Shown: positions 7,175-26,047 of the stretch, in pieces
Numbering within the stretch: the first letter of the stretch is position 1
How the letters are laid out: each line of letters starts with the position of its first letter
NCBI RefSeq assembly: GCF_001194135.2
Contig: NC_069003.1
Coordinates: forward strand, 31,510,109 to 31,574,108
Source: Octopus bimaculoides
Taxonomy: Eukaryota
Reading direction: 5' to 3'
DNA: 64,000 nt
The notes under the pieces: generated by a model
Databases searched by the model: none
Told to the model about the DNA's origin: nothing
Seen by the model: only the letters and a program-made list of their open reading frames with translations
Made by a program: the position numbers and the translations under genes

Positions 7175-7222
<48 letters not shown>

Positions 7223-7223
7223 C

Positions 7224-7254
<31 letters not shown>

Positions 7255-7350: not shown

Positions 7351-7592
7351 GCACACATGAATAGTGGTGATTCCTGCTACATAAGGCAGAGCATGCAATT
7401 TATAAAAATCAAAGCAATATAATTGAAGCAGGGTATATATAGCATGTATATGGCTTCTTTGCAGCCATCTGAAGTTAAAAAATGAAAGATTTATAACCAA
7501 ATCTAATTTGTTATTTGCATTCAATTATATATTCTAGACATGCAGAAAACACACGGATATATATTTATCCGAAAAAGTATAGTATCAAATAT

Positions 7593-7698
7593 CCATCACG
7601 GCTGATCTTACCAAATGGTTTCATGTAAAGAATACAATGGAGTGTTAGGTAACAATCTGATTATATAACTTCACACTCATCAGAGTTAGCTGATATGG
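7593..7698 (-). ncRNA. Type I hammerhead ribozyme motif, catalytic core intact (copy 1)
   Basis: Minus strand: aact-CTGATGA(7683-7677)-Gtgtgaag...ctttacat-GAAA(7622-7619)-CC ATTT GG-TA|agat. Predicted cleavage between 7609 and 7608. Confidence 0.75.
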
Positions 7699-7763
7699 AA
7701 GGGAATATGGTGACTGATTGAAAACCGAAGAATAACTATAATACGGGCAACGCTATTCTTCAC

Positions 7764-7807
<44 letters not shown>

Positions 7808-8012
7808 AGGTGAAGAATGAAACTGCCAGTGTTATATCTATTCTTTGGTTTTCAATCTGGCAATCATTGCAATGACATATCGGTGACAAATCAAATGTCA
7901 TGCATGATTACATGGATAAGAACAATGATACTGCCATACTGATTATATAATGTACGTTATATAAAAATAGACCCACAGCTGTTTAGTCATGACCAAATGA
8001 AGATGAGATAGA

Positions 8013-8059
<47 letters not shown>

Positions 8060-8300
8060 NNNNNNNNNNNNNNNNNNNNNNNNNNNNNNNNNNNNNNNNN
8101 NNNNNNNNNNNNNNNNNNNNNNNNNNNNNNNNNNNNNNNNNNNNNNNNNNNNNNNNNNNNNNNNNNNNNNNNNNNNNNNNNNNNNNNNNNNNNNNNNNNN
8201 NNNNNNNNNNNNNNNNNNNNNNNNNNNNNNNNNNNNNNNNNNNNNNNNNNNNNNNNNNNNNNNNNNNNNNNNNNNNNNNNNNNNNNNNNNNNNNNNNNNN

Positions 8301-8334
<34 letters not shown>

Positions 8335-10236
8335 TCTAAACAATGAAGGTGTTTTATCAATATACTATTAAATGTCTACCCACAAAGTCTAGATAATTAC
8401 TTACGAACGTGCACGTGCACACACATGCATGTGTCTATGTGCATTTGTGTATATATATATCAGTATGTATATCTGTGTGTGTTTATGTGTGTACATTTGC
8501 ATGGTTATTGTGGTATATATGTATATACTTAAACATAATTGACTTACTCACATTTGCTGCCAATTTGGCCATGTCACATCTACCTCATCATATCACAAGC
8601 ATCAATTATCATCTCTTATCATTATCATAATGATTATTATCAATAGCATAATCATTGTTTGTTTGTTTTTTGGAACAATAAATCTTGAAGCACATAATGC
8701 TATGAATAACATGTCCCATGGGCAGCCGTCAACTTTTTCTATCCAAAAGGAAATTTTCATCTCATTACTTACATGCTATCATTTATAGCTCTATCTGCTC
8801 CAAGATCCATTGTTCCAAAACATAGTTATTTCACATTCTCTCAAAAGTTTATAAATTCTTATGGCATCAATTATCATCTTTATTTTCATTATCCTTATCA
8901 GCATCCTAATTATCCTCATCATAACACAAACTCTTTCATTTTTTACTTCATTGTTTTCACCTCTGTCTCATATGTTAGTTTGGCTTTACTTATTCTGTTC
9001 TGTCTAAAGTGGAATCTGTTTGTCAGTCAGGTGAACTGAGGCACTGACTATAGTGGTGAGGCATGAACATAAAAATCACCATATTTTCCAGCATACAAGT
9101 AAAATTTCTCAGACTAAAATTTACAGCCATAAAAGTTTTTAAAAAAGGTATGTTGAATTATACACCAACACAAATTTGGAGGACCAAAAATTCCATATGA
9201 AATGCAGGAGGATTTGGAAAGATGGTAATGATGTTTGAACATTTACAATATGTTTACTTTATATGCAGGAAAATATGAAACCTAGAACTGCACCTCCTCC
9301 TCCTCATCATCATCACAACAACACTGTAGTTGGGTAATTTAAGCCTTTTGTCAATACTACCAGCATCATCATCACCATCATTAAGAGGAGATTGCCGTCA
9401 TCATTAAGAGGAGAAAGAGGTATGAAATGACTTCAGGACAGGGCAAATGGAAAATGTCACACTCATACCTCTCTCCTCACCAAAATATTAGTGAAAAAAA
9501 AAAGTGAAGGATTTTCATTGAGGATTTGAAACCTGTTTACATATTTCATTTGATGAAAATTTGCTGCCATCGCCACGTCTACCACAGTATAAAGTCTGTC
9601 TGGCTTTCAAGTCAACAAAATTAGCAGGCAGTGGAGTCAGGGACAGGTAGAGATCCCTATATTATTTTAAGAATGCAGGGCATAGGAAGCAGAGGTGACT
9701 GGGAAGCTGCAATGTTCATGCCTTTCCAGAGGGAAGCAGGGATACGGATTAGCAGCATAAGGGAAGCAAATTGTTTTCAGCGAGAAACTGAAAGCAGATC
9801 ACGTACTTCACTCACCGAGACCTTACCTCTTGCTCTAAACCGGTTGTCACTTCATTTATTCTGACATGATGGCCATAGGAGGATTGAATAAAAAATACAA
9901 ACTATTTTAAAGCAAAAGAAGAAATAAGCACTTTTCTCTCTCTCCCTCTCTCTCTCTACAAGAATATATATACACTCACACAAGGGGGGTGCTGGAAAGT
10001 TCTTGGCTTTGGGTAAAAGAAAATACAAGAGGATCAGTTAATTATGATTTTAGTCAACATACTCCCCTCTCAGATTCACACACTTATTATAACAGCCTTT
10101 CAGTTTCTCAAAGTCCTGTAAAAGAACTCAGACGGTTGGGCCTCCAACTAGGCTTATTTTGAGAAGAAGGCAAAGTTGATTATATTTACCCCAGTACCTG
10201 ACTGGTACTTTATTATATCAACCCTAAAAGGTTTAA

Positions 10237-10464
10237 CCCTTTCGTTACTGTATTTATTTTAAGATGCTCTGTGTTTCTTTCAATTACTTTAAATATAACA
10301 AAGAATTTAGTAAAATAACTTAGTTATCATTAAGCTGGTGTTAGGAACACATAAATTGTGACTAAGGTTTGGTGGAAGATATTAATTCAAAATTTATGAA
10401 AACAAGACATTTGTACTCAGAGCCAGAGCCGGAGCCAGTTTCAGCTGGGTTGGTAACAAAAGGG
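10237..10464. mobile_element. Second piggyBac-type MITE, nested in a family C SINE
   Basis: TIR CCCTTTCGTTAC / GTAACAAAAGGG (11/12); TTAA at 10233-10236 and 10465-10468. The SINE sequence resumes on both sides. Confidence 0.85.
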
Positions 10465-10572
10465 TTAAAGGTAAAGTTGGCCTCAGCAGAATTTGAACTC
10501 AGAACATAACGAATCGTAAGAAAGTCTGCTAAGCCTTTTGTCTGACATGTTATTGATTCTACCACTTTGTTG

Positions 10573-10675
10573 CCTTCTTCCTTCCATATATTAATGCTAC
10601 CTTCTTCCTTCCATATATTAATGCTACCTTCTTCCTTCCATATATATATTGCTGCCTTCTTCCTTCCATATATTC
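10573..10675. repeat. 27-bp minisatellite (ccttcttccttccatatattaatgcta) x about 4
   Basis: Unit starts at 10573 and 10600, period 27. Confidence 0.9.
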
Positions 10676-10948
10676 CTTCTATATATTAATGACCAACTTG
10701 AAGTCAGCTTTGTTAGCTTTATATTCTCTTATTCAAATGACACTAACATTCAGATTAACAAAAATTTATCTCAGACATTTAGACATTTAATCAACCTATT
10801 TATTTATTTACCATAAACACACATCTATAGACATGCATTGAGAGATGCACTAAAACACGTGGACATCATATCTCAGACATGTCCGAGTCCCACATCTTGA
10901 TGAGATGTAAAATGACCACTCGAAGACTTGTTCTTCATATTGTCTATC

Positions 10949-11112
10949 TAAGGCAAGATGCAGTGTATGTAAGGCAGGATATGGTATATGTAAGGCAAGA
11001 TATGGTGTATGTAAGGCAAGATATGGTCTGTGTGTGTAAGGCAAGATTTGGTATGTGTAAGGCAAGATATAGTGTATGTAAGGCAAGATATAGTGTATGT
11101 AAGGCAAGATAT
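10949..11112. repeat. 21-bp minisatellite (gtgtatgtaaggcaagatata) x about 8
   Basis: Direct inspection; produces 7-aa periodic spurious ORFs. Confidence 0.9.
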
Positions 11113-11194
11113 GTATTGATATATCTCTGGCAAGCTGTACTGTAGCTAAATCAGCTTATATAATTATGTCAACTGTAAAGTAAATGAGGAAAGA

Positions 11195-11590
11195 TGTAAT
11201 GTATTTGCAGCAACATGCAGAGTGTCTATTGGAACATGCAGTATGTCTATTACAACATGAAATGTGTCTAAGGAAACATGAAGTGTGTCTAAGGAAATAT
11301 GAAGTGTATCTATGGTAACATGTAATGTGTCTAAAGCAATACACGATGTAACAGTGTACTTACAGCAACACACTGTATCTATGACAACATGAAGTGTGTT
11401 TATGGCAACATGCAGTATGTCTATGGTGGCATGTAGTGCATCTATGGTGACATGCAATGTATCTATGGCAACATGCAGTGTGTCTATGGCAATGTAGAGT
11501 GTATTTATGACAATATACAGTATCTAGACCAAGATGTAGCATATCTATAGCAATATATAATGTATCTATGGCACAATATGTGTTATATCT
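11195..11590. repeat. Degenerate 21-bp minisatellite (atgcagtgtgtctatggcaac-like)
   Basis: Direct inspection; 7-aa periodic ORFs in the track. Confidence 0.8.
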
Positions 11591-11822
11591 ATGCCAATAC
11601 TCAATCTTCTAGGGTAATATCTGATGTATTTAAGATGTTAAGCAAAGAATCAAAATATAATTAAATCAAGATAATACAATCCAGTAATATAGATACTATT
11701 TCGCTACAAACTATACCTGATTATTTGTATTCAGCACCAAAAAAAATCTAACAAAATATTTGCCAATTGAAAAAAGGGAGTAACAAAGAAATAACACAGT
11801 AAATAAATGGAAATGTCTATTG

Positions 11823-13260
11823 TTAAATAAATACCTTTGATGTGTCTGAATTGCCAACTGTTGTGAGATCTTGACTGGTGGAATATTTTAAATGAAGGCT
11901 ACGTGGAATATCAAAATTGTCCATTTCAAGTCCATCGTCATCATCACCAATGTCCAGATCGATATCATTGAGAGAGGAAATTGTATAAAATGTTCGACGT
12001 GGTGGTGTTTTTTTACTAATTGGAGAGATGACCCGACTGGTCAGGATCTCCGATGCAATGGAACACGCGTTAAGTCCAGTTCCGGACGTGGAGAAACAAC
12101 TATTATCTGATTTACCAAAAGAAAATTCACTGTTTTTACCTAGATGTGGGAGCGATGCCAACGTATGTCTTCGCCTTTTATTGTGGGTAACTGGTTTGGG
12201 GTTCGAATCCATGGACCAGTCAAAGTCCAAGCTTCGACGGGGTGAGGGCACATTATCACAGCTTTTACCCACAAGCTGTCCACCAACTAGTTCATCCCAT
12301 TCGTAAGAGTCTTGTTGCGATGGAGAGTCATCAGAATTGCTTTTTATTAGCCGAGATTTATTAAAAGTCCCACTAAAACTGTCTACAGGTATACCATTTT
12401 CCGGTATTGGCGCTAAAGGCATTGCTTTCATATTGGAACGACGTAAGCCGCTTGAATTTGGACGTCTTTGAAAATAGATGTCGGCCATTTCTTCAGAGAT
12501 CTCAGGAGACGATTCATTGGCACTTTCATCACTACAAGAATGGATCGAGCTCAGATCTTGGATACGCTCTGATGAACGCTGCAGCTCAGCATCTGAGTGA
12601 GAAGGTGAAGTATTGGGAGACACGTTTGGTATTGGAGAAGGCATTCCATCTTCTTCAGTGCTATTTGCCTTTTTCACTTTGCTGGTACTGATTGGACTGG
12701 ATCCATCGACACTATCGACATCATCATGACCAGAAAGGTCAACTTTACCCTGTTTTGCAATGGCTTTTGCTGGACTTTTTGGTTCCAACTGAAACTCAGG
12801 ATCGAGATGGAGCATAGTTTCACTGTTTGGTGCATTCTTTGTTTCAGACTCTAGCTGAGCTAAAAGCTTCTCTTCAGTTTCTGTATTGATGTCGGTCACC
12901 AAATCGCTATCATTAAAGGTCAAGAGGTGACGGCTAGCCAATGGAATGGTCAGACCATTTTCTAATGGAACTTCGATGGGAATATTAAGAGCTACATCTC
13001 CTGTGTTACCGTTTGCTACAGGAGCTTCAGTCTCAGCTACAAACAATTCCAGAGCATCTGTCGCTATCTCCATGGATTCTGGGGCAATTCCATGACTTGG
13101 GCTTTCGATTTCAACTGGACTCAGAATATTCCATTTACTTTCAAAATCTGATTCTTCCATGTTCTTCAAAGAGATCTCCAGATCCAACAGATGACCATGT
13201 AATTCCTCAATTGTAGGACGCTGTTCTGGTTTCTGCCAACACATTTTCATCAGTTCGTAT
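11823..13260 (-). CDS. AATK: Coding exon 10: [16 protein letters not shown]...long disordered tail...DTSK(VFI*)
   Basis: ttttattcag|A acceptor; matches the 485-aa ORF in the track. Ends either at TAA 11823 or at a possible donor AAG|gtattt (exon end 11835). Confidence 0.93.
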
Positions 13261-16200
13261 CTGAATAAAACAAAAGACAAAAATTAAAGAGGAGTCAAAG
13301 AATTTCTCAAATTCTAAATAAAACGAATATTGTTAAAACTATATACAAACCAAGATGGTAGCATCTACATGGGTGATCAGCCTGCTAGAAATAGCAGCTA
13401 AATCCCTTGCACTTTAATCCTGTTACAATGACTCCTTATCTCTTTTTGACTTTGTGGTGTACTGGAGGTCAAACAAAAGAATGACTAGTGCAGTCTGCAG
13501 AGTAATTACTGGTACACATCAGTTTTAACTCTTTTAGCATTCAATGGGACTGAACTCAGAACCATGTGGTTGGGAAGGAAACTTTTTACCACATAGCCAT
13601 GCCTACAACAGAATGATCACAACTGGAAATTCTTTGATCAATAGTCAGCTGGATCAGGGACGACTTAGGGTTAAACAACAACATCAAAAACATTAGACAA
13701 TTTAGTATTAAATACTCAATACTCAAGAGAAGGATGAGATGGCCATGGCTGGAATGTTATTTGATCATTGATCTCCTGGATCAGAGTTGACATGGAGTAA
13801 AACAACAAGCATAGAATTTTACAGAGTATAGTCAGTGTTACGTAGAACTTACATGTTGATCTTCTGGTGCTCAGGATAATTTGGAACTGGCAGAACTTCT
13901 GTCTTCTTTAGAACAACACAGTCCAAGACTTGTTCATCGGTCAACCAATGATAGGGCTGTCGGCCAAACTGTATCAATTCCCACATGCTCACACCATAAG
14001 ACCTGGGAGTTATGAAAATAAAAAATGAAAATGATAAAAGTGTGAGAGGCTAAATCTGGCCAGTTTGAACATAAAATGTGTAGAACATCTGGGCTGGACA
14101 TGGTTGGTTTAAGTGCTAAAGGGTTAAATGTACCAGTTCTTTTGATTTTAGAAGGAAAACAAGAAGATTCTGTAAAAGACTTGAATTGAGATGCTTACCA
14201 AATATTGGCCTGAGGTGTAAAAGCCTTTGTACGCCAAACTCCTTTTTGTAAAGTAAGCGTCTCAGGAGCCATCCACCGGACTGGCAACAGGTCACACCCT
14301 GTATCATAATAATCCTCCTACAATAGACATTTTAGATATATTTATACAATTGTTGCTGAAATGATGTATAAAGAATTAAACCAGACATATACAGACCTGG
14401 TCTATTAACAACATACAAAAAATTTAACAACACATAGATAGATGTGAGTGTAGGTATGGTTGTGTGGTTAAGAAGGTTGCTTTGCAGCCATATGGGTTTT
14501 GGGTTCAGTCCCACTGTACAGCACTTGAGGCAAGTGTCTTTTGTTATATGTAACCCCAGGCCAGCAATTTATGAGGGAATTGGTTCATGGAAACTGATCA
14601 TGTGTGAACATACATATATATAAATATATCTTTTATTTTATTTTTTTTTTTTACTTGTTTTAGTCACTAGACTGCAGCCATGCTGGGGTAGCACCTTGAA
14701 AACTTTTTGGTTGAATAAATTAACCCCAGTACTTATTTTTTTCGAGCCTGGTAATTATTCTATCAGTCAGTCTCTTTTGCTGAACCACTAAGTTACGGGG
14801 GACATAAACACACCAACACCAGTTATCAAGCAATGGAGGGAGGGACAAATGCACACACACACACACACACATGTATGTATATAATGTGCTTCTTTCAGTT
14901 TCTTTCTACCAAATCCACTCACAAGGATTTGGTCAGCCCAAAGATATAGTAGAATACACTTGCCAAAGATAATAAATAAAAAGGAAGGGGTGGTCAGAAT
15001 TGGAACACATTTGATCATATGTCTGCTCAAACAGGACTGACCTGGGGTTAAACAACATCTCATCAGCCAAAGAAGCCCTGCAAAATTTATAAGAATCATC
15101 CTTGTTACTTGGAGTATATATCTCCCGCCTTTGCTGATGTGGCAACGGTTACAAGGATGAGCCCCACTGACTCACCTCCACCATTAATCAAACTAATGAG
15201 AGGAAGCCTCTTCGTTGCTAAAAATAACAGTCTAAATTTTCCTAAAGAAATTGGAAGGACACATTGGATAATTTAGTCATAAATGCATACATTGTTTGAT
15301 AGAAGAGGAGCAAAATGATTGATGGTTATGACTGAAAAACCATTTGATTATAGATCTATTGAATGAGGACTGACCAGGAGTTATGAAATAACATCAACAC
15401 CATTCCTACCTCGAGTCAATCAGGGAACTTCTTTGAGGCCAGTCACCTGTTAGAAATAACAGTCAAATCTCTCTCAAATCATGCCCTGCTGTTTACAAAA
15501 AATACATGTTGAATAATGTGGTCTTGTGTTCCTCTGCACACAATAAAAAGTTGGAATGGTCACAGTTGGAATGTATTTGATAAGGGCTATCCATTCCCTT
15601 GTAATTATGTGCCGAAAAATAAACTTCTACATCCATCATGTGACAGTAGAAAGCTATATTATTATGAGTTAAATATACCCTTTGATGAGCATTGGTGACC
15701 TTACAAGTCAACAAATGGTGACCCCCACTATAACAATGACCTGTTTGGTATGTTGACCTACATTCAAATGTTTGCAGTGTAAAAGGCGTAGGAGTGGCTG
15801 TGTGGTAAGAAGCTTGCTTCCCAACCACATGGTTCCGGGTTCAGTCCCACTGCGTGGCACTTTGGGCAAGTCTCTTCTACTATAGCCTCGGGCCGACCAA
15901 AGCCTTGTGAGTGGATTTGGTAGACGGAAACTGAAAGAAGCCCGTTGTATATATGCATATATATATATGTATGTGTTTGTGTGTCTGCGTTTGTTCCCCC
16001 CAACATTGCTTAACAACCGATGCTGGTGTGTTTACGTCCCCGTAACTTAGCGGTTCGGCAAAAGAGACCGATAGAATAAGTTCTAGGCTTCCAAAGAATA
16101 AGTCCTGGGGTCGATTTGCTCGACTAAAGGCGGTGCTCCAGCATGGCCACAGTCAAATGACTGAAACAAGTAAAAGAAATCTTTTTTTTATTGTTTGATA

Positions 16201-16610
16201 TTTTTATTTATATAGGACATAAAACATGAGATACTTTATGTGTGTGTATGCATGCATGTGTGCATGAGTGCATGCATATGTGCAGTAGTGGTGGCAGAGG
16301 GGGGAATGGAAAGCTATGTTGTGCATAATTTTGCCCAATGGGAATGAAGTGAAATGGTGACAACTAGGACGTTAATCCTTTAGCATTCAGGTTACACTGT
16401 CAAATGTAAAGCTCATTTATTTAGTAACATTGTTTTCGGTTAATCATGCGTTATCTCATAGCTTCAAGATCTCAATGATGTGATTGTTTATTTTTAGACT
16501 GATACTGTTTGGGTAGGTGTGAGAGGCAAGATCTGGCCAGTTTGAACAAAACAGGTAGAATATTTTGGCTGAATATGGCCAGTTTAAATGCTAAAGGGTT
16601 AAACCAGATT

Positions 16611-16649
<39 letters not shown>

Positions 16650-19244
16650 CTTATTCATAAATATATATAAAATACTGACCTTATACAAATCCTCAGCCAG
16701 GCCATAATCACCAACTTTTACAGACAGATCATTGGTCACCAAACAATTACGCAAAGCAAGATCACTACAAGTAAAATAAATGTGGAAAAGGAAAATGTAT
16801 TTTAAAAACAATTTCTTTTAAAGTTAGACATAAATACTTACGTGTTAAGGTCATCTCTGCAGATTTTCTGTGGAAATGATAGCCAACACTGATTTTGTTA
16901 GGATGTTTTGTATCCGAGATGCCAGATATAAACAAACAATGAGATCAAAGATGAAAAAGTGGGTAATGGGCGTATAAGCCATATTTCTGGAGTTTTTACT
17001 CCTTCATCAGCACTTACCCCAACCCATTAACCATTCACAAGTACCTTGACCTAATATGCTGCAAATCCTTTATTTTGGTTCTGTAAAAAGGGGAGGGCCT
17101 TTTTTCCCCCACTCCTTTTGCCGATCCAAAATAAGTGATTTGCAGCATATTAGGAGGTCAGGATATTTGATTCCACGCCCAAAAAAAATTCGAGTTTTTT
17201 TTTNNNNNNNNNNAAAAAAAAATTAGCAAAAAATCTAACAATGAACGTAGTTGAGACCCTGAAGACAATGATTAGATCCTGTACACACTTACCAATGAAC
17301 ATAGTTGTGACGATGAAGACAAGCCAAACCACAGGCAACATCGACAGCAAAATGTAACAAGAGTTTCCTCTCTTTATGCATTGGTAATTTATTTTCCTGT
17401 TCGATGAGGTAACTCTTCAGATCGCCCTATAATATAGAGAGAAAAAGTTAAATTCACACAGATCAACACATATAATAAAGTTCATAAGTTTCTATGCCAC
17501 GGGAGGTGAAATCATTAATGTTTTTAGTAAAGCCCTTCACCAAAATCTACGTACGCAAGCGTGCATGTACGCATGTGTGTTGGCGTGTTCTATATACATC
17601 ATAGACACACACATACATACATATATATCACTGGGTAATCTTAGGTATGTACCGAAAGATCACCATATCACTGTATTGTTTTACTGACCAGACTATCTTA
17701 TGTTGTTACACACCGCTCAGCTGGTTAAGTGGGCAGGCGAACGTTCCCCCTGAATGGGACGCCAGTCCGTTGCAGAGTGACCCATTTACAGTTGAGTGGA
17801 CTGTGGCGACTTGAAATTAATTGTTTTGCTGAAGAACACACGGTAAAGTAAAAATCTACCGAACACACAATACCGTTAGTCTGAGGATCAAACCACTACA
17901 CCACGCTCTACATACATATAATGTAATAAAAACTAGAATCCAATGAACATAGCGGTGATCTATGTGAGTACAAATTCTTTAATCGAGTTTGTAAATATGA
18001 ATAAGCTTGTATGCTGTGGGAGACAAAGATCTTGAGGTTTCGTGGGTGAAAGAAAATTTCCCCAACTATAAAGAGATAAGTTTCAGGTTGAACGGGAGAG
18101 TTGCTTCCCTTGATTTTCAATATTTGCTTGACAGATAGATTCAATGTTTTTCTTATTTATTTTAATCCTTTTCAAAGTTATTTGAATTAATATAAAAAAT
18201 ATTTCTATCGTAGTATTTTATAAGATCTTCTATTGCTCTGTTCTTTCTATACAACATATATTTATAGCGTTTGCAATTTTGAACAGATTTTATTTTTTGA
18301 ATAGATTTTATCTTTTTTTTCAGACTTATAATGCAGGTGTACCAAATAAGTAAAAAAAAAATTTTTTTTAATTATCAAACCCAATAGTCCTTCAGACTGA
18401 TTTGTAACAAAAACACTCCTTAGTAATTACTGCTTTTAATTATGACTTAGAAGTGAAAGGGGCAACACCTATGCTCCTTTGTTGAAGTTACAAAATTAAT
18501 TGGAAACGATTACTCTCATAGTTGAAAAATATTGGGAATGTGTATTATATATAATGCATGAAGCCGGAGAAATATAAGTTGGGCATCACATGTAGTTTAC
18601 AGGACAGGCAAAGGATTAATCCCTCATTCAGTTTAACATCACTCTTAGTACCATGAGCAGAGTCAGCTCGATTGTAAAGTATTTGGACAAGTCTCTGGCT
18701 TGTGTGTGTGTATGCTCACATGTGCGCGCATGTATATACACAGTCGCCATATTTAATTCCATAACGGCTATCTCTGCCGAGCGCAGGGTTACATAATCAG
18801 ACTGTTATCTAACACTCTGTTGAACCCTGCGTGAAACCGATTGATAAGATCGGCTGTAATGGATATATAATACTTTGGTTAATATATATGTATATATATG
18901 TAGGTAGACAGATAGATAGATAGACAGGCAGATAGATAGCAATATGTTATTTTTATATATACATAAAATACATATATATAATTTGAATAAGGTGACAACA
19001 AATGAATTTAGTGCATCTCATAAGAAAACCTATTCATCACAGCAAAAAAAGGGATTTCCTAAAACCACTTAGTATGCTTGAACATGCAGAGAGGGGCCCC
19101 TTCTCCATCAAGCATCGAAATTGCACCAAACTAAATGTAAACTTTATCAGTTGGTCTCTTATTCAACATGGATATGAAATGTGGAGTGTTGCAAGTTAAC
19201 ATCGATAAACAATATTGAAACCCAACCATGACTTTATGGACACA

Positions 19245-19284
<40 letters not shown>

Positions 19285-20188
19285 CTAATAAATAATGTTA
19301 ATTATAAATCATAAGAAAAAATCAAACAACTGATTGGATATACAAACCAGTGGGAAATATTCAAAGAGTATGAGGAACGGGATAGCTTCAGTACACATTC
19401 CAAGTAGTCGGAGTACGTTAGGATGATCTAATATCCTGTGGAATTAGAAAGGAAGAGACAGTACATTACAAATGAAAATATATATTTGTGTTTGTATAAA
19501 TGCGGGTGCATCTGTATGTAACTAACTGGTACCCTGTTGGTTACAATGACGAGAGTACCAGTTGATTTGGTTAATGGAACAGCCTGCTTGTGAAGTTAAC
19601 GTGCAAGTGGCTGAGTACTCCACAGTCAGATGTACCATTAACGTAATTCTCAGGGAGATTCAGCATGACATAGAGTGTGACAAGGCTGGCCCCTTTGAAC
19701 TAGAAGTGCGACTCATTTTTGCTAGCTGAGTGGACTGGAATGATGTGCCACCAAGAATCAAATTCACAACCTCACAATCATGAGCTAAAGATGCTAACCA
19801 CTAAACCATATGTCTTCACTGCATCTGAATGTATGCATACACACACACACACACATGTTTGAGTGCACAATGAAAAATGAAGCACTCAATACAAACAAGT
19901 AGCATATAATACGCATATAATCCTTTTTTCTCTCCTTTTTTTTCTCTGCTTGTTTCTCTCCTTTCTTTCTGTGGTTCTTTCTGTGGAAGAGCGTAGGCTC
20001 GAAACGTTAAAGACTTTCTCAATTCCCGTACGTTATACTAATACATCTATTTGTTTTCTACACCACCTGTCTTCGTCTGTTGTTTTTTTGTGAATTCTCC
20101 NNNNNNNNNNCAGTCCTCAGTCAAGTCGTCCAACCCATGCTAGCATGGAAAGCGGACGTTAAACGATGATGATGATGATGATGATGAT

Positions 20189-20230
<42 letters not shown>

Positions 20231-21221
20231 GCGGGACCCGTGAATATTTCACAGAATTAATGGTAAACTTATTGGGTTATTTCTGAAACTTTTTATCCAT
20301 TATATATTCTGAAGCATGTGTCTATTGAGTTCTAAGAACAGGTTATTAGTATAGTTATACTGAAACTTACCGGTAACCAGCAACTTCTTGGAGGAACTTC
20401 TGCATTTCAAGAGCGCTTGCATCATCTCGAAGTACTTGAACAACAACATTACTTTGTCTAACTCCAACCAAAACATTATCAGCAATTCCTTGGACAACCT
20501 TTGCAAAATGAAAAAGAGTTTACAGATTAACAATGTTTAAAACAACTTAGCCAATATTAGCAATAAAACAGAGAAAGATCATCATTATCATTATTATTAT
20601 AATCATTATCATTAATACAGGAAGTTGGCTGAATCATTAACATGCCAGACTAAATAATTAGTAGCATTTCAACTGTCTTTATGCTCTGAGTTCAAATTCT
20701 CCCAAAGTCAACTTTGCCTTTCATCCTTTTAGGGATCAACAAAATAAGTATCAGTCGATCACTGGGGTCAATGTAATCGACTAGTCCCCTCCCCAAATAT
20801 ATTAGGTCTTGTTCCTATTGTAGAAAGAATTACTAATATTATTAAGGTGACAAGCTAGCAGAATCGTTAGCACACCTGGTGTATTTTGACCATCGCTACG
20901 TTCTGACTTCAAATACCGCCAAGGTTAACTTTGCCTTTCATCCTTTCAGGGTCAATAAATTAATTTATTATTATTATTATTATTATTTATAAGGCGGTGA
21001 GCTGGCAGAATCATTAGCATGCCAGGCAAAATGCTTAGCAGTATTTCATCTGTCTTTACGTTCTGAGTTCAAATTCCGCCAAGGTCGCCTTTGCCTTTCA
21101 TCCTTTCAGAGTCGATAAATTAAATTCCAGTTGCGTACTGGTGTCGATCTAATTGACTGGCCTCCTCCCCAAAAATTTTGGGCCCTGTGCCTAGAGTAGA
21201 AAAGATTATTATTGTTATTTA

Positions 21222-21255
<34 letters not shown>

Positions 21256-21624
21256 GGTAGCAGGCTGGTGTAAATCATTAGGGAACTGGAAAAATACTTT
21301 CCGGCTTTTCTTCTTGCTCTTTAGAATCTGAGTTTAAAGTTATTTCTGTAAATTGTCCTTATTTCTAATGAAAGAAGTTAATATTTTGGTATTAAGATGA
21401 TGGGGCATAGTTTGAAGGAGTTATGGCTGCCATTTCTAGGTAGTTGAGTGAGTATGTAGGGGCTCCCTTGCTGGCTTGTAGTGGCCATGGCTGCAGTTTA
21501 TGTTGTTGTTTATCTCCAGGTCAAACCTGATTTAACAGACCTATTGTTGTTGATGTCATTCAGCCTTGGGTTAGCCCCATAATCACAAAGCCACTCACTG
21601 AATTAATTACATGTGTGTGTGTGT

Positions 21625-21655
<31 letters not shown>

Positions 21656-21993
21656 TGCTATTTCTAGCAGGTCAAGTAGCTAGTACTTTGATTAGAGTCT
21701 CCTTCAGGTTAATTGTTTCGAATGAATCTAAACCGAATGACATTTTTGAATTCACAAAATCATTGAAATGATGGCAGGTCATGACTCGTGTTCAGAAGAT
21801 GAGTCATAACAGGTGAATAAGAAAACTGACAGACTTGATCTTAAGAGACTGAGACGCAGAGGCCAACAGTGAGAAAGATGGGAAGATGAATTAGATAGAC
21901 CTGACGAAAATCAGCAGCTGAGTACCCAAAGGTGAAAGTTTTATTGAGAGATAAAAGTGTTCCCCTTTATCTTTTCATAACTTTCAGCTTTAT

Positions 21994-22052
<59 letters not shown>

Positions 22053-22062
22053 NNNNNNNNNN

Positions 22063-22094
<32 letters not shown>

Positions 22095-23121
22095 AAGAGA
22101 GAGCAATGATTAGTTGATTCACTGATAAAAATAATATCAGCAATACAACAATGAAGCATTATAAAAAAAATATATATATAGTGACCTTGATTGACAAACA
22201 ATTACAGAGTTTAATTGCCAGTTATTGAAGATGGCACGTAGTAAAACAGAGGAAATTTATGAGAACAATTGAAGAGATAAAGTCACAAAATGAGTTATGA
22301 ATTTGTGTGAGAGGTGGGTATAAACAGTTATTACAGACATAGTTTTATCTTAGTTTTGAGGTTACCTTTAAACAGATTCTAATCTATACGATAGGTCATT
22401 TTGACCTTCAGGTACCTGACAGGTGGTCTGATGTTCAAGCAATTTTGTGGTTGATAAAAATGAACATAAACACACCATTTTATTACATACTTACAAAGGA
22501 CAGAAATTTTAAAGAAATTTTTGTTCCCAGGTCTACACGAACCCATAGTAATCATACCTGTCAAGGTCCCAACTATGGGTATTTAATTAGTATATTATGG
22601 CTTGCCTGCCTATGCAAGTAAAGAATGGATCTGGCAGACTCTGCGGAAGAAACCTTCATGGTTCAATGGAGGGGAAGGTAGCTACAGCAGAGAGCAAGAT
22701 GAGGCAAATAAGACATTTTGGTCATCTCTTGCATCCATCTCCATCTCCAGTTGTCTTGACCTGATCTTTCTACCGGATTAAAGTTGGTCAGAGATGAGAG
22801 AGTCGGGTTTACAGTACATGACTATTCTTCACTTTAACTCTTTAGCATTCAGATTATTCTATCAAATATAATGCTTATGGTTTGAATTAATTATGCATTA
22901 TCTCATAGTTTTGAGATTTCAACGATGTCATTGTATATTTTTAGACTGACATTGTATGGTAAGTGTGAGAGGCCGAATCTGGCCAATTTGGACATAAAAT
23001 GTGTAGAATATTTGGCTTGGATATGACTGGTTTAAATTCCAAAGGGTTAAAGAAAGTCAGTGAGTAAGTTATCAGTCATCCTTAAGGATGGCTATATGGC
23101 CCTTGTCACTTCAATGGAAGA

Positions 23122-23156
<35 letters not shown>

Positions 23157-25397
23157 TATAGAGATGTAATGTATATATACTAGTTCTTTTACTTCCTTAC
23201 CTTATTAATTTGAAAGAGAGAGAGGGGGGAGGGAGAGAGAGATAGTGTTTACAGACTCTGTAATCTATCTCAGGTTAGTGGTGGAGAAGCAAGCTCACTA
23301 CAGTTCATATCCAGCTTAAACTTGTACAGATCAATCTCTGGAAAGATCAACCTCAGTAATCGGAAAATGGACCTCTGTAAGATTAAAAAAAAAAAGAACA
23401 ACAGAAAAGAGTATATATATTTACTTACCTGGCCAAACCAGCCCATCCCCATCTCAGAGAGATAGGTGAGTTGTTTACGAGGGAATGCTTGTTGGAAGGC
23501 TGCAACGAGACAGAGAACAGAGATGAGAACAAAATAATTGTATAAATAAAGAATTAAAAAAGGGTTTGTTTTTTTTCCTTCAAAAGGAACAGATAAGCAG
23601 ACTGCATGCTGCTGATAAATTAAATTTGTCATGTGAAGAACAAGACTAAAACCAAAGTATAGTATCTGTTTTTTTATCAGCTTATTATCTGATAAAGACC
23701 CATATTCAACGATATCAGATAGCAAGCTTATTTTAGAACAAGGTGGAGACTTAGGAACTACTCCATCTCTACTATGAGGAGGCCTAGTATTACATTGCAG
23801 TACTTCAAGAATTCAGCCTTTTCCACCCAAGGAATAAGAATTATTATTATCTGCCCTTGACACTTTTTTTTTTTATTTTTTTTTATTTTGTTATATTCTG
23901 TCCTTTTTAAGTCCTTGCAGTCAGTAAAAGAAATTATTGTAAACTGTGGTGGATAGTGTATGGACGAGATACCTTACCATACTTAACTGTGTCCTGTTAT
24001 GTCCTTATATTCATACAGGGAGTTTAATTCATCGATTATGGTTGTATGCTCCACCCTCTATACATCTGTCTTCCTTTGCCGAAATTAGAAATTATTATTT
24101 TAGCAGTATCACTTGAGTGTTGAACAAACAAAATACATTGTAATGTTTGTTCTAGCTCTTTATGATCTGAGTTCAAATCCAGCCTGGTTCAACTTTGTTT
24201 TCCATACTTCTGGGACCAAAAAAATAAGTATTGGCTAAGTCCTGGGTGGGACTGATATAATCAACTTTTCCCTCCTCATCAAATTTCTAGCCTTGTGCCT
24301 ATGTAAGAAATCATTTCCATGGGTAGTGGATTGGAATAATTATTAAAGCAGCAGACGAAATGCCTTGTGATATTTGTTCTGGATCTTTGCATTCTGAGTT
24401 CAAATCCCATTGAAGTTGACTTTGTCTTTCATCCTTCTGGGACTGATAAAAATTAAAATATTGTAAAAATAATTATCAATATAATTGACTGTATCCCAAT
24501 TCTCCAATTTCTGGTTACGATTTCTTTCCTCCTCCTCCTACACTAGTCTTAGTGATCTAACAGCAGTCTTAGACACAGACCTTTCCTAGTCTGATAAAAC
24601 AATTTTTGGGGGACTAAAATAAGTAATATTCCATAAAGTGTAAACTTACAGACAATTCTTGAGTTGGGTTCATTGTTGTCAGTGGCAATACAAGTGATTC
24701 TTGGTCTCAGGGCTGTGGTAGCAGGTATTGCTTTTGATAAAATGTCAGGTAACGGCTCAAAATTCACCAACGATGTATTGTCCACTTCGGGGCCAACACA
24801 ACCTTCCAAAGGACGTTCTCTTGGATTTTCTGCATCCTCTTCAAAACTCTGGAGGAAGAAAAGACAAAAAAAATTAGTACATTTATTAGTTTCAGTCATT
24901 GTCATGTGATCTGTGATAATGTATCATAATTTTACTGACCCCAGTACTTGTTCTGATCTGATACTTATTTTATTAAACCCTATTTATCAAACTGCTATGT
25001 TACAGGCTATGTGAAGGCACATGGCTCAGTGGTTAGAGTGTCAAGCTTACGATCGCGAGGTTGTGCGTTTGAATCCTGGACCGGGCTGTGTATTGTGTTC
25101 TTGAGCAAGACTCTTTATTTCACGTTGCTCCAGATCACTCAGCTGTAGAAATGAGTTGCGACGTCACTGGTGCCAAGCTGTATCGGCCCCTTTGCCTTTC
25201 CTTTGGATAACCTCGGTGGTGTGGAGAGGGGAGGCCGATATGCATGGGCGACAGCTGGTCTTCCATAAAACAACCTTGCCCGGGACTTGTGCCTGGGAGG
25301 GTAACTTTCTGGGTGCAATCCCATGGTCAGTCATGACCGAAGGGGGTCTCAGCATGTTACAAGGCATATATCACACCACACACACACACCACACACA

Positions 25398-25439
<42 letters not shown>

Positions 25440-26047
25440 TATCTTTTATGCTTCAGTCATTGGACTGTGACCATGCTNNNNNNNNNNNNNNNNNNNNNNN
25501 NNNNNNNNNNNNNNNNNNNNNNNNNNNNNNNNNNNNNNNNNNNNNNNNNNNNNNNNNNNNNNNNNNNNNNNNNNNNNNNNNNNNNNNNNNNNNNNNNNNN
25601 NNNNGCTGAACTGCTAAGTTACAGGGACAGAAACAAACCAATATCGGTCGACAGCAATGGTTGGGGATAACACAAACACACACATATATATGCAATGGGC
25701 TTCCACACAGTTTTCGTCTACCTAATTCATGCACAAGCCTGGGGCTACAGTAGAAGACACTTGCCCAAGATATTGTGCAATGGTGGGTAAAGTGAGCTTC
25801 TTAAGCACACGGCAATGCCTGCACCTGTATCACAAAGATTTTTAAAAAGGAGAACCTTTGTCTTGAACATTTTTTTTTTTTTTTTCTAATCTATAAAATA
25901 TCCAGTATTTATAAGACCATTTTCCAAAATATTGAAATAGCAACTTACTTTGAATCTTGTAGATTTTCCAAAGCAGGAGCACTGAAATGCCAAGAAGACA
26001 ATGCTGGCTAGCACCACAATAGAGACCAGTACTGTTATTTCTAGCAT
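11823..26047 (-). CDS. AATK: Lemur-tail kinase (LMTK/AATK family), spliced CDS complement(join(25949..26047,24650..24848,23429..23499,20371..20498,19348..19435,17293..17426,16680..16764,14199..14317,13853..14002,11823..13260)), 2511 nt, 836 aa
   Basis: All nine introns are GT-AG with compatible phases, and the total length is divisible by 3. Architecture: N-terminal TM, RFK|[50 protein letters not shown]...RPT, post-kinase DFESKWNIL, long acidic/Ser tail. GWFG, DLALRNC, DYG and the FExxW post-kinase motif are LMTK hallmarks (recalled from human AATK/LMTK2). The symbol denotes the family, not 1:1 orthology. Confidence 0.93.
13853..14002 (-). CDS. AATK: Coding exon 9: [49 protein letters not shown](I)
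   Basis: actcccag|G acceptor, AT|gtaagt donor, 150 nt, phase 2 to 2. Confidence 0.95.
14199..14317 (-). CDS. AATK: Coding exon 8: [39 protein letters not shown](W)
   Basis: ctattgtag|GAG acceptor, TG|gtaagc donor, 119 nt, phase 0 to 2. Confidence 0.95.
15785..16176 (+). mobile_element. SINE family B (head gtggctgtgtggtaagaagcttgcttcccaaccacatggttccgggttcagtccc, internal microsatellite, tail aaatgactgaaacaagtaaaaga)
   Basis: Full copy. Others at about 46453-46872 (+), 36152-36511 (-), 14645-14960 (-), 35395-35720 (-), 49650-50030 (-), plus many fragments. Confidence 0.85.
16680..16764 (-). CDS. AATK: Coding exon 7: [28 protein letters not shown] (catalytic loop, DYG)
   Basis: tacttgtag|T acceptor, AAG|gtcagt donor, 85 nt, phase 2 to 0. 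Confidence 0.96.
17293..17426 (-). CDS. AATK: Coding exon 6: [10 protein letters not shown]...[19 protein letters not shown](C)
   Basis: tattatag|GGC acceptor, TG|gtaagt donor, 134 nt, phase 0 to 2. Confidence 0.94.
18759..18862 (+). ncRNA. Hammerhead motif copy 2, core mutated (CTGCCGA)
   Basis: atct-CTGCCGA(18774-18780)-gcgcagggtt...aaccctgcgt-GAAA(18833-18836)-CCGATTGA-TA|agat. Confidence 0.65.
19348..19435 (-). CDS. AATK: Coding exon 5: [29 protein letters not shown]
   Basis: attccacag|G acceptor, CTG|gtttgt donor, 88 nt, phase 2 to 0. Contains the HPN..L.LLG kinase motif. Confidence 0.93.
19976..20013 (+). ncRNA. Minimal hammerhead-like motif (Penelope-type), non-canonical core
   Basis: tcttt-CTGTGGAA-gagc(gtag)gctc-GAAACGTT-aaaga: stem I tcttt/aaaga, stem II gagc/gctc, palindromic ACGT stem III. 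Confidence 0.45.
20371..20498 (-). CDS. AATK: Coding exon 4: [42 protein letters not shown] (beta2-beta3-alphaC)
   Basis: cattttgcaaag|GTT acceptor, CG|gtaagt donor, 128 nt, phase 0 to 2. This frame is absent from the ORF track. Confidence 0.92.
23429..23499 (-). CDS. AATK: Coding exon 3: [23 protein letters not shown] (Gly-rich loop)
   Basis: gttgcag|CC acceptor, CAG|gtaagt donor, 71 nt, phase 1 to 0. Confidence 0.93.
24650..24848 (-). CDS. AATK: Coding exon 2: [13 protein letters not shown]...NNEPNSRIV (juxtamembrane)
   Basis: ttcctccag|AGT acceptor, T|gtaagt donor, 199 nt, phase 0 to 1. Confidence 0.88.
25010..25350 (+). mobile_element. tRNA-headed SINE family A, less-decayed copy
   Basis: Colinear with 1199-1530 and retains CpGs. 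Confidence 0.8.
25949..26047 (-). CDS. AATK: Coding exon 1: [33 protein letters not shown] (signal-anchor TM plus CxC)
   Basis: The exon starts at 26096 after tttttcag. Two in-frame TGA codons precede ATG 26047. Donor is AAA|gtaagt, phase 0. Confidence 0.88.

What the first reader, a model, noticed from the sequence alone, without database searches (positions are those of the whole stretch)
20436..20438. LMTK ortholog lacks the invariant beta-3 lysine (VVVK to VVVQ): predicted pseudokinase
Codon 21 of exon 4 is CAA (Gln) where kinases, including vertebrate LMTKs (VVVKEL), have the ATP-binding Lys. The beta-2 position that could compensate as in WNK kinases is also Gln (WFGQV). The alphaC Glu, the catalytic Asp (HCD, vs HSD in vertebrates), Asn, DYG and APE are intact. 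A-to-I editing could give Arg (CGA) but not Lys. The rest of the gene is undamaged, which fits a scaffold or pseudokinase role rather than a pseudogene.
Basis: partly seen in the sequence, partly recalled or inferred. Interest (0 to 1): 0.7.

Follow-up and report, generated by a model that had tools for sequence, protein, structure and literature searches.

The report
Octopus LMTK kinase lacking catalytic lysine
The octopus version of the membrane-anchored LMTK kinase really does carry glutamine where kinases normally need a lysine to use ATP, so it probably acts mainly as a scaffold; this lysine has been lost many separate times in the LMTK family, so the case is real but not exceptional.

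Summary
Window 20438..20436 (minus strand) is CAA, codon 21 of coding exon 4 of Octopus bimaculoides LOC106870410. It encodes Gln144 at the beta3 "VAIK" lysine, equivalent to human LMTK3 Lys193.

- **Not an error or rare allele.** DNA contigs from three studies, about 35x raw RNA reads and spliced transcripts all read CAA. Six further coded organisms carry the same sequence.
- **No rescue found.** No A-to-G change shows at the codon, and the window holds no alternative exon 4.
- **Rest of the gene intact.** The Gly-loop, alphaC Glu, HCD Asp, Asn, DYG and APE are present. AlphaFold models the kinase domain at pLDDT above 90, closest to LMTK3 (6SEQ).
- **Under constraint.** The domain is no more diverged than in other molluscs, and the last exon gives pN/pS of about 0.2.
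- **Derived state.** Eight other mollusc orthologues keep Lys.
- **Recurrent in the family.** Of 152 LMTK-type domains, 31 lack the lysine: Arg in insects, amphioxus and a toad, Asn in iguanian lizards, Gln in several fishes and a bird.
- **Likely role.** A conserved tail motif (YEWDEL) points to a kinesin-linked scaffold.

By the sequence definition this is a pseudokinase. Loss of activity remains untested. It is a new member of a known kind, of moderate interest.

The parts
25949..26047 (-). Coding exon 1. It holds the start codon and the N-terminal membrane anchor ([21 protein letters not shown]...).
   Evidence: The peptide was located in the window. It is identical to the N-terminus of RefSeq XP_052831845. 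AlphaFold predicts a helix at residues 2-22 with pLDDT about 90.
24650..24848 (-). Coding exon 2, the juxtamembrane linker ([12 protein letters not shown]...NSRIV).
   Evidence: The peptide was located and the AG and GT splice sites were read. It matches P0111.
23429..23499 (-). Coding exon 3. It encodes beta1 and the Gly-rich loop ([19 protein letters not shown]).
   Evidence: Splice sites were read. RNA loose ends at 20500 continue into this exon in 13 raw reads and 3 contigs.
20371..20498 (-). Coding exon 4. It encodes beta2, beta3 and alphaC ([42 protein letters not shown]).
   Evidence: RNA coverage is confined to 20370-20500.
20436..20438 (-). CAA codon for Gln144, at the position of the beta3 'VAIK' lysine (human LMTK3 Lys193).
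   Evidence: Sequence. Alignments. DNA and RNA reads.
19348..19435 (-). Coding exon 5. It encodes beta4 and beta5 ([29 protein letters not shown]).
   Evidence: Splice sites. RNA loose ends at 20370 continue into this exon.
17293..17426 (-). Coding exon 6. It encodes alphaD and alphaE up to the His of the HCD motif.
   Evidence: Splice sites. The joint 16764/17293 appears in RNA contigs of four organisms.
16680..16764 (-). Coding exon 7. It encodes the catalytic loop and DYG ((C)[28 protein letters not shown]).
   Evidence: Splice sites. The spliced joint is seen.
14199..14317 (-). Coding exon 8. It encodes the activation segment and APE ([19 protein letters not shown]...).
   Evidence: Splice sites. 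RNA loose ends at 16679 continue into it.
13853..14002 (-). Coding exon 9. It encodes alphaF and alphaG ([17 protein letters not shown]...).
   Evidence: Splice sites. RNA loose ends at 13260 continue into it.
11835..13260 (-). Coding exon 10. It encodes the end of the kinase domain ([15 protein letters not shown]), the [10 protein letters not shown] signature and most of the disordered tail.
   Evidence: ORF and splice sites. RNA contigs and about 30-45x raw reads cover it fully. pN/pS against another octopus species is about 0.2.
12279..12305 (-). Tail motif YEWDELVGG, a W-acidic motif of the kinesin-light-chain-binding type. It is conserved as [FY]EWD[DE] in other molluscs and in a vertebrate LMTK2-type protein.
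   Evidence: Located. Motif scan and tail alignment. The WD/WE motif and its kinesin light chain binding are described for LMTK2 in PMC11550312.
4699..4857 (-). Terminal coding exon of isoform X1 (DFTDLPLDEES...KQQDS plus stop).
   Evidence: The peptide of P0259 was located. RNA contig loose ends at 11834 read into this exon in organisms A, D and G.

Best explanation
Window 26047..4699 (minus strand) carries the single LMTK (lemur tail kinase, AATYK) orthologue of Octopus bimaculoides. RefSeq calls it 'uncharacterized protein LOC106870410'. The protein has an N-terminal membrane helix, a TK-like kinase domain and a disordered tail of about 450 residues.

A substitution at the beta3 lysine (Gln144, codon CAA) arose in the cephalopod lineage after it split from the other mollusc classes sampled. 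It is now fixed in at least seven octopus taxa.

Shown here: the change is real, the gene is expressed, spliced and under purifying selection, every other catalytic residue is kept, and a family-wide tail motif is conserved.

Inferred: Gln cannot supply the positive charge that positions the ATP alpha and beta phosphates, and it cannot form the salt bridge to the alphaC Glu. Phosphotransfer should therefore be strongly reduced or lost. The intact Gly-loop, Asn and DYG Asp may still allow nucleotide binding, as they do in KSR.

The protein would then act mainly as a membrane-anchored adaptor. The folded kinase domain would serve as a docking or conformational module. The tail motifs (YEWDEL of the W-acidic type, and further conserved blocks) would recruit partners such as kinesin light chain, as described for vertebrate LMTKs.

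The family seems pre-adapted to this. In the LMTK3 crystal structure the DYG tyrosine fills the adenine pocket and completes the C-spine without nucleotide, and octopus keeps that tyrosine. In addition, about a fifth of the LMTK-type domains sampled have lost the lysine independently.
For: **The codon is real and fixed.**
- Sequence.
- DNA contigs of three studies agree.
- Raw RNA at about 35x shows no variant letter, and the splice junctions are confirmed.
- The same sequence is found in organisms B to G.

**The gene is an LMTK orthologue.**
- By sequence, 6SEQ LMTK3 scores E 3e-71 against 1e-53 for the next family.
- By fold, Foldseek TM-score is 0.93 on 6SEQ.
- The architecture fits, and the gene falls in the mollusc clade of the NJ tree.

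**The Gln is derived.** Patella, Gigantopelta, Haliotis, Potamilus, Mytilus, Argopecten, Saccostrea and Liolophura all have Lys.

**Other catalytic residues are intact**.

**Constraint is maintained.**
- The octopus domain is 46-50% identical to other molluscs, which are 41-65% identical to each other.
- The differences I could place in kinase exons are 5 synonymous against 2 conservative non-synonymous.
- In the last exon, the 40 listed differences are 24 synonymous and 16 non-synonymous, over about 297 synonymous and 1044 non-synonymous sites. That gives pN/pS of about 0.19, and the indels are in frame.

**Tail motifs are conserved**.

**Vertebrate LMTKs have documented scaffold roles**, including the WD/WE kinesin light chain motif (PMC11550312).

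**LMTK3 biochemistry and structure** (PMC7673765): the K193A/D295A/D313A mutant is inactive, and the DYG Tyr occupies the adenine pocket.

**The loss is recurrent.** The beta3 column holds K 121, R 18, Q 8, N 3, S 1 and Y 1 of 152. Taxa are named.
Against: - No biochemical data exist for any lysine-less LMTK.
- Strict retention of the Gly-loop, alphaC Glu, catalytic Asp, Asn and DYG Asp is what one expects if nucleotide binding or residual catalysis still matters. A pure scaffold would be expected to let these drift.
- The LMTK3 kinase-dead construct is a triple mutant, so it does not isolate the effect of the lysine.
- The age of the substitution is unknown, because I could obtain no squid, cuttlefish or nautilus sequence. 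If it is young, conservation of the other residues may only reflect too little time.
- The W-acidic motif is a sequence match, not a tested interaction.
I could not check whether any other basic side chain reaches the phosphate site.
Confidence: 0.6

Rival explanations
1. The protein is still a working kinase. Gln144, water or another residue positions ATP well enough, or the family uses an unusual mechanism in which the beta3 lysine matters less. The substitution is then nearly neutral for catalysis.
For: - All other catalytic residues are kept, and the kinase domain evolves no faster than in lysine-bearing molluscs.
- The lysine is the least conserved 'invariant' residue of the family, at 121 of 152. 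The HxD Asp is kept in 149, the DYG Asp in 148 and the Asn in 140. This could mean the lysine is less critical here.
- WNK and POMK show that sequence-based calls of 'dead' kinases can be wrong (PMC13519141).
Against: - There is no lysine in beta1 or beta2. The Gly-loop is GMGWFGQV with its third Gly intact, so WNK-type or POMK-type relocation is excluded at the sequence level.
- Mutating the beta3 lysine is the standard way to make kinase-dead proteins, and LMTK3 with K193A plus two Asp mutations is inactive.
- Gln carries no charge.
Confidence: 0.25
2. A-to-I RNA editing recodes CAA to CGA (Arg) in some tissues. This would give a KSR-like or insect-LMTK-like Arg at beta3.
For: - Cephalopods recode many neural transcripts (general knowledge).
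- Arg is the commonest replacement at this position in the family, in 18 of 152 domains.
Against: - About 35 raw RNA reads over the codon show no other letter.
- RNA contigs of organisms A, B, D, E and G all read CAA.
- No A-to-G change was seen anywhere in exon 4 or the 1.4-kb last exon in the raw-read run.
- The limits are that editing below roughly 8% would be missed, the tissue of that run is unknown, and contigs drop rare variants.
Confidence: 0.05
3. The Gln is an assembly error, a sequencing error or a rare allele of the sequenced individual.
For: It is a single-base difference from AAA, and the window comes from a draft assembly with many N gaps.
Against: Independent DNA runs from three studies agree, as do raw RNA reads and transcript contigs. 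Six other coded organisms carry the same codon.
Confidence: 0.01
4. The locus is a decaying pseudogene, or the lysine is supplied by an alternative, mutually exclusive exon 4.
For: None beyond the missing lysine.
Against: - The ORF of 835 or 885 aa is intact, and every junction I checked has canonical splice sites.
- Transcripts are abundant and correctly spliced.
- pN/pS is about 0.2, and the indels are in frame.
- tblastn of octopus, vertebrate and Patella exon-4 peptides finds no second copy in the 64-kb window. The best other hit, E 0.012, is low-complexity sequence outside the gene.
- RNA reads flanking exon 4 join only exons 3 and 5.
Confidence: 0.02

Closest known systems
Vertebrate lemur tail kinases LMTK1 (AATK), LMTK2 and LMTK3
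   Same: - Best sequence and fold match: 6SEQ at E 3e-71 and TM-score 0.93.
- N-terminal membrane anchor with no ectodomain, DYG in place of DFG, a non-RD catalytic loop, and a long disordered tail.
- The FExxWxxLxP signature after the kinase domain (consensus).
- A W-acidic tail motif, FEWDDD in an LMTK2-type protein.
   Different: - Gln144 replaces the Lys (LMTK3 Lys193).
- The catalytic loop reads HCD, not HSD.
- The Gly-loop is followed by Gln, not Lys (GWFGQV against GWFGKV).
- The protein is much shorter, at 835-885 aa against roughly 1000-1700 aa for the vertebrate representatives.
- I found no clear RVxF PP1-docking motif. The aligned block reads RRTFY.
LMTK orthologues of other molluscs (Patella, Haliotis, Gigantopelta, Mytilus, Saccostrea, Argopecten, Potamilus, Liolophura)
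   Same: - They form one clade with octopus in the NJ tree.
- They share the GWFGQV Gly-loop.
- They share tail blocks PLxTIPE, [FY]EWD[DE]..G..LVG[KR], SP[KR]..[DE]F.[DE]W and SFY.
- Kinase-domain identity is 46-50%.
   Different: - All eight keep the beta3 Lys.
- Their catalytic loops read HHD, HQD or HRD, with DF[AS] instead of DLA in most.
KSR1 and KSR2 (VAIK changed to VAIR)
   Same: Only the beta3 lysine is replaced, while the HRD and DFG motifs are kept. They retain ATP and Mg binding, act as scaffolds, and show at most low activity (PMC13519141).
   Different: - They belong to a different kinase family (RAF-like TKL).
- The replacement is Arg, which keeps the charge. Octopus has uncharged Gln.
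- The insect, amphioxus and Bombina LMTK proteins with Arg are the closer parallel to KSR.
WNK kinases and POMK (lysine relocated to beta2)
   Same: They have no lysine in beta3, while other catalytic motifs are present.
   Different: WNK and POMK carry a compensating lysine in the Gly-loop or beta2 strand and are active. Octopus LMTK has no lysine anywhere in beta1 or beta2 ([12 protein letters not shown]), so this mechanism is not available.
EphB6 receptor pseudokinase
   Same: From memory, its beta3 lysine is also replaced by Gln in a membrane-anchored TK-group protein that signals as a scaffold. [quoted passage not shown]
   Different: From memory, EphB6 has also lost the HRD and DFG aspartates, whereas octopus LMTK keeps both. 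This comparison was not tested here.

Membership tests
LMTK (Lmr, AATYK) kinase family | The kinase domain is closer to LMTKs than to any other kinase family. | tested here: met
   By phmmer against PDB sequences, LMTK3 6SEQ scores E 3.2e-71 (243 bits). The insulin receptor and IGF1R score about 1e-53. Foldseek ranks 6SEQ first at TM-score 0.93 and rmsd 2.1 A. The NJ tree places the gene inside the mollusc LMTK clade.
LMTK (Lmr, AATYK) kinase family | An N-terminal transmembrane anchor, no extracellular ligand-binding domain, and the kinase domain close to the membrane. | tested here: met
   The protein starts [21 protein letters not shown]. AlphaFold predicts a helix at 2-22 with pLDDT about 90, and the kinase domain starts near residue 100. 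No dedicated TM predictor was available.
LMTK (Lmr, AATYK) kinase family | DYG instead of DFG, and a non-RD catalytic loop (HxD with x not Arg). | tested here: met
   The gene has VGDYGLA and HCDLALRN. The family alignment has Tyr in 137 of 152 sequences, and position x is mostly S, T, R or H. DYG and HSD in LMTK3 are described in PMC7673765.
LMTK (Lmr, AATYK) kinase family | A long, intrinsically disordered, Ser/Pro-rich C-terminal tail carrying short docking motifs. | tested here: met
   Residues from about 425 to 835 have pLDDT below 50. YEWDEL and three further blocks are conserved with other molluscs. [10 protein letters not shown] matches the family consensus FExRWxxLxP.
LMTK (Lmr, AATYK) kinase family | Ser/Thr kinase activity (K/E/D/D signature complete). 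| tested here: not met
   The K of K/E/D/D is Gln144, while E161, D241 and D259 are present. The signature is as defined for LMTK3. This bears on catalysis, not on evolutionary membership, which rests on homology. Activity itself cannot be tested with these tools.
Pseudokinase (sequence definition) | Absence of at least one of the VAIK Lys, the HRD Asp and the DFG Asp. | tested here: met
   The VAIK Lys is replaced by Gln. The definition is quoted from PMC13519141.
Pseudokinase (functional definition) | No phosphotransfer activity, with function through binding or allostery. | not testable with these tools
   This needs recombinant protein, ATP-binding assays and kinase assays with a Q144K revertant.
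WNK-type 'with no lysine' active kinases | A compensating lysine in the Gly-rich loop or beta2 strand. | tested here: not met
   The beta1-beta2 sequence is [17 protein letters not shown] and contains no Lys. The third Gly of GxGxxG is retained.

The most novel reading that the evidence does not exclude
Octopus LMTK, and with it the many other lysine-less LMTKs of insects, amphioxus, lizards and fishes, may still be catalytically competent without any relocated lysine. That would define a lysine-independent way of positioning ATP in a eukaryotic protein kinase. It might depend on the family-specific DYG tyrosine and the non-RD catalytic loop. It would explain why every other catalytic residue stays under strict constraint after the lysine is lost.
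Probability: 0.1. Interest if true: 0.7.

Novelty: new member of a known kind. Interest (0 to 1): 0.35.

Why it matters
LMTKs are poorly understood neuronal trafficking kinases. It is debated how much of their function needs catalysis and how much is scaffolding of kinesin-1, PP1, cdk5/p35 and myosin VI.

A natural, fixed and selectively maintained lysine-less LMTK in an animal with a large nervous system is a ready-made experiment on kinase-independent LMTK function. So are the many independent losses in insects, amphioxus, reptiles and fishes found here. If these proteins are dead yet conserved, the ancestral core function of the family is probably non-catalytic.

There is also a practical point. 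The octopus gene is labelled 'uncharacterized' in RefSeq. Several mollusc and amphioxus orthologues are mislabelled 'serine-rich adhesin for platelets'.

Tried and rejected
- **Word-indexed protein search.** Searching with the spliced kinase domain returned only proteins of 510 aa or less, and no mollusc LMTK. The index appears not to reach the long LMTK proteins, so it could not give orthologues.
- **Exhaustive search with the spliced protein.** I got round it by tiling exon translations on two scaffold hits (alignment A4), which worked.
- **Deeper cephalopod sampling.** RNA contigs of organisms H, I and J did not lay on exon 4 at 80% likeness. All cephalopod proteins collapse into the 50% cluster of P0111, and the run index finds only near-identical DNA. 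The state in squid, cuttlefish and nautilus therefore remains unknown.
- **Partial difference counts.** The 'other letters' table leaves out some of the differences counted in the pieces table. The ones it did list lay more than 40 nt from a piece end. My synonymous and non-synonymous counts for short exons are therefore partial.
- **Taxon look-ups.** The look-up of encoding contigs for P0192 and P0179 gave accessions but no taxon names. The taxa of several lophotrochozoan-like clades in the tree stay unknown. Only 23 of the 150 representatives were named.
- **Structure distances.** AlphaFold coordinates are not exposed, so I could not measure distances around Gln144. Only confidence and fold match are reported.
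- **Alternative exon 4.** Rejected.
- **Assembly error.** Rejected.
- **PP1 RVxF motif.** No match to [RK]x0-1[VI]x[FW] in the octopus tail. The homologous block reads RRTFY, while Mytilus has KNVSF. I make no PP1 claim.
- **Literature.** No paper in the library links LMTK with octopus apart from one conference abstract book, and none treats invertebrate LMTKs.
Full report
**1. What is at the coordinates**

The gene is on the minus strand. Window 20436-20438 reads TTG on the + strand, which is CAA (Gln) on the coding strand.

I rebuilt the gene model from stop-to-stop frames and splice sites. The coding exons are:

| Exon | Window coordinates |
|---|---|
| 1 | 26047-25949 |
| 2 | 24848-24650 |
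| 3 | 23499-23429 |
| 4 | 20498-20371 |
| 5 | 19435-19348 |
| 6 | 17426-17293 |
| 7 | 16764-16680 |
| 8 | 14317-14199 |
| 9 | 14002-13853 |
| 10 | 13260-11835 |
| Terminal (isoform X1) | 4857-4699 |

The spliced product is identical to RefSeq XP_052831845 (835 aa) and XP_014771951 (885 aa). These are 'uncharacterized protein LOC106870410' of Octopus bimaculoides.

In that numbering the residue is Gln144. The alphaC Glu is E161, the catalytic loop is H239-C-D241...N246, and DYG starts at D259.

**2. Is the Gln at the lysine position?**

Three independent alignments agree:
- MAFFT with the first hits.
- phmmer against LMTK3 chain 6SEQ, where octopus '[12 protein letters not shown]' aligns with 'aqvvvkelrasag'.
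- A 152-sequence family alignment.

The LMTK3 paper names Lys193, Glu210, Asp295 and Asp313 as the K/E/D/D signature (PMC7673765). The lysine of VVVKEL is residue 164 in the chain numbering. That equals Lys193 if the two numberings differ by 29, which I infer from the two isoform lengths.

One detail is off by one residue. From my recollection of the WNK1 sequence, the WNK compensating lysine replaces the third glycine of GxGxxG. The octopus equivalent is therefore Gly122, not Gln123. No lysine occurs anywhere in beta1 or beta2, so the conclusion is unchanged.

**3. Is it an error, an allele, or edited?**

- **DNA.** Contigs from three studies (2015, 2022, 2025) match the window exactly across 20300-20600.
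- **RNA.** Raw reads at about 35x cover exactly the exon and show no other letter. Their loose ends run into exon 3 and exon 5.
- **Other taxa.** Contigs of coded organisms B, C, E and F are 100% identical over 20405-20470. D and G show no difference at the codon. These taxa are truly distinct: D and G differ from the window by 7 of 135 nt in exon 6 and 56 of 1427 nt in exon 10.
- **Editing.** CAA to CGA is not seen at the codon. The raw-read run showed no A-to-G change in exon 4 or exon 10. Low-level or tissue-specific editing is not excluded.
- **Alternative exon.** tblastn finds no second exon-4-like sequence in the window.

**4. Is the gene alive?**

The gene is transcribed and correctly spliced in several species.

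In the kinase exons, the differences I could place between organism A and the others are synonymous, with two exceptions:
- Three synonymous in exon 6.
- One synonymous in exon 4.
- Several synonymous in the loose-end reads of exon 8.
- Two conservative changes, E to D at the first codon of exon 8 and H to N near the end of exon 9.

In exon 10, 40 of the 56 differences from organism D were listed. Of these, 24 are synonymous and 16 are not, over about 297 synonymous and 1044 non-synonymous sites. That gives pN/pS of about 0.19. The three indels are all multiples of three.

The octopus kinase domain is 46-50% identical to other mollusc orthologues. Those are 41-65% identical to each other, so the domain is not evolving unusually fast.

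AlphaFold, using a 55-sequence alignment, gives three regions: a helix at 2-22, a kinase domain at pLDDT mostly above 90, and a tail below 50. The best PDB fold match is LMTK3 6SEQ, at TM-score 0.93 and rmsd 2.1 A.

**5. Where did the change happen?**

The exhaustive profile search returned the family as 50%-identity representatives. The nearest relatives of the octopus protein are from a limpet, a deep-sea snail, an abalone, a chiton, a freshwater mussel, a mussel, a scallop and an oyster.

All eight have Lys at beta3. They share the octopus-type GWFGQV loop, and they form one clade with octopus in a neighbour-joining tree.

The Gln is therefore derived on the lineage leading to octopuses. 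I could not obtain squid, cuttlefish or nautilus sequences, so its age within cephalopods is open.

**6. The wider pattern**

In the alignment of 152 LMTK-type domains, which includes a few cluster members of the same species, the beta3 column holds:

| Residue | Count |
|---|---|
| K | 121 |
| R | 18 |
| Q | 8 |
| N | 3 |
| S | 1 |
| Y | 1 |

By contrast, the HxD Asp is kept in 149, the DYG Asp in 148, the Asn in 140 and the three loop glycines in 144-148.

The named lysine-less members are:
- **Arg in insects:** Lycorma, Laodelphax, Homalodisca, Panstrongylus, Cimex, Tribolium, Exocentrus and Athalia.
- **Arg elsewhere:** a pseudoscorpion, a springtail, amphioxus and Bombina LMTK2.
- **Asn:** LMTK2 of iguanian lizards. 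Two species were in the census, and a third was a member of the same 90% cluster whose beta3 residue I did not read.
- **Gln:** Paramormyrops LMTK2 and unnamed or hypothetical proteins of Gymnothorax and Dallia (fishes), plus a budgerigar protein.

On the tree these fall in at least eight separate places. Some singletons may be annotation or assembly errors, and I did not check their reads. The octopus case is thus one instance of a recurrent event in this family.

**7. How it most likely works**

*Established knowledge.* The beta3 lysine binds the alpha and beta phosphates of ATP and pairs with the alphaC glutamate. Replacing it is the usual way to make a kinase-dead mutant that can still bind ATP (stated in PMC7673765, and PMC13519141). 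KSR, with Arg at this site and intact HRD and DFG, still binds ATP and Mg and acts mainly as a scaffold.

*Inference.* Gln144 removes the charge, so phosphotransfer should be strongly reduced. The intact Gly-loop, Asn246 and Asp259 could keep nucleotide binding.

*Why the family may tolerate this.* In the LMTK3 crystal structure the DYG tyrosine sits in the adenine pocket and completes the C-spine without nucleotide. Octopus keeps that tyrosine.

*Support for a scaffold role.*
- Vertebrate LMTKs scaffold kinesin-1 light chains through a WD/WE motif. They also scaffold PP1, cdk5/p35 and myosin VI (PMC11550312).
- The octopus tail carries YEWDEL at window 12305-12279.
- Seven of the eight other mollusc orthologues have FEWDD[FY] at the homologous place. 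The chiton Liolophura gave no hit. A vertebrate LMTK2-type protein has FEWDDD.
- Three further tail blocks are shared among molluscs. The tail is about 93% identical to that of another octopus species.

I found no clear PP1 RVxF motif.

My best estimate is that this is a membrane-anchored adaptor whose kinase domain serves as a folded docking or switch module, with little or no catalysis (confidence 0.6). The main rival is retained activity by an unconventional route (0.25). That rival is favoured by the strict conservation of every other catalytic residue.

**8. Comparison and novelty**

By homology this is a member of the LMTK family. By the sequence definition it is a pseudokinase.
- **Most like:** KSR, and the Arg-bearing insect LMTKs, in having lost only the lysine.
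- **Unlike:** WNK and POMK, because no lysine has been relocated.

The library holds no paper on this protein, or on invertebrate LMTKs in general.

It is a new member of a known kind. Lineage-specific conversion of a kinase to a pseudokinase is common, so a specialist would be mildly rather than greatly surprised.

The family-wide lability of the lysine is the more interesting result. It makes the question 'do LMTKs need to be kinases?' directly testable.

Noticed in passing
Proteins (for example P0176 Lycorma, P0152 Branchiostoma, P0184 Sceloporus, P0171 Paramormyrops): The beta3 lysine has been replaced many times independently across the LMTK family. Of 152 domains, 18 have R, 8 Q, 3 N, 1 S and 1 Y. 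The other catalytic residues are 92-98% conserved.
   Followed up: partly
Window 17293-17295 with 16764 (split codon); family column: The residue between His and Asp of the catalytic loop varies widely in the family. It is Cys in octopus, Ser in vertebrates, His or Gln in other molluscs and Thr in insects. All are non-RD kinases. Most other molluscs also have DFA or DFS where octopus and vertebrates have DLA.
   Followed up: no
Window 12305-12321 and 12101: Organisms D and G carry an in-frame 18-nt insertion directly upstream of the YEWDEL motif. From my own translation it encodes PSQQDS and looks like a tandem duplication of SPSQQDS. They also carry an in-frame 3-nt deletion at 12101. The aligner places the insertion at 12305 in one contig and at 12321 in the other, as expected for a tandem repeat.
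   Followed up: no
Window 11835 joined to 4857 (terminal exon 4857-4699): RNA contigs of organisms A, D and G splice exon 10 to the distant terminal exon of isoform X1. The intron is about 7 kb. The short 'NK*' ending of isoform X2 was not located in the window and not seen in these contigs.
   Followed up: partly
(Patella XP_050394125, Haliotis XP_046581877, Branchiostoma XP_035694587): Several clear LMTK orthologues are named 'serine-rich adhesin for platelets' in RefSeq, presumably because of their Ser-rich tails. The octopus gene is 'uncharacterized'. These look like annotation errors.
   Followed up: no
Window, for example 46717-46400, 16009-15767, 15840-15496 and 39848-39711 (minus-strand frames): An interspersed repeat recurs in introns and flanks. 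Its translated fragments look like '...GLNPEPYGWEANFLPQSH...' and '...[14 protein letters not shown]...'. It is probably a SINE-like or transposon-derived element.
   Followed up: no
Window 20200-20228, and many N runs (for example about 37500-38050, 35720-36150, 57400-58180): A (TA)n microsatellite lies about 140 bp downstream of exon 4 in the intron. The window holds many assembly gaps and many TA, CA and TCTA-type simple repeats. None touches a coding exon of this gene.
   Followed up: no
(method): The 'other letters' table of read laying listed fewer differences than the pieces table counts (for example 3 of 7 in exon 6). The listed ones all lay more than 40 nt from a piece end. Variant lists for short exons are therefore incomplete.
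   Followed up: yes
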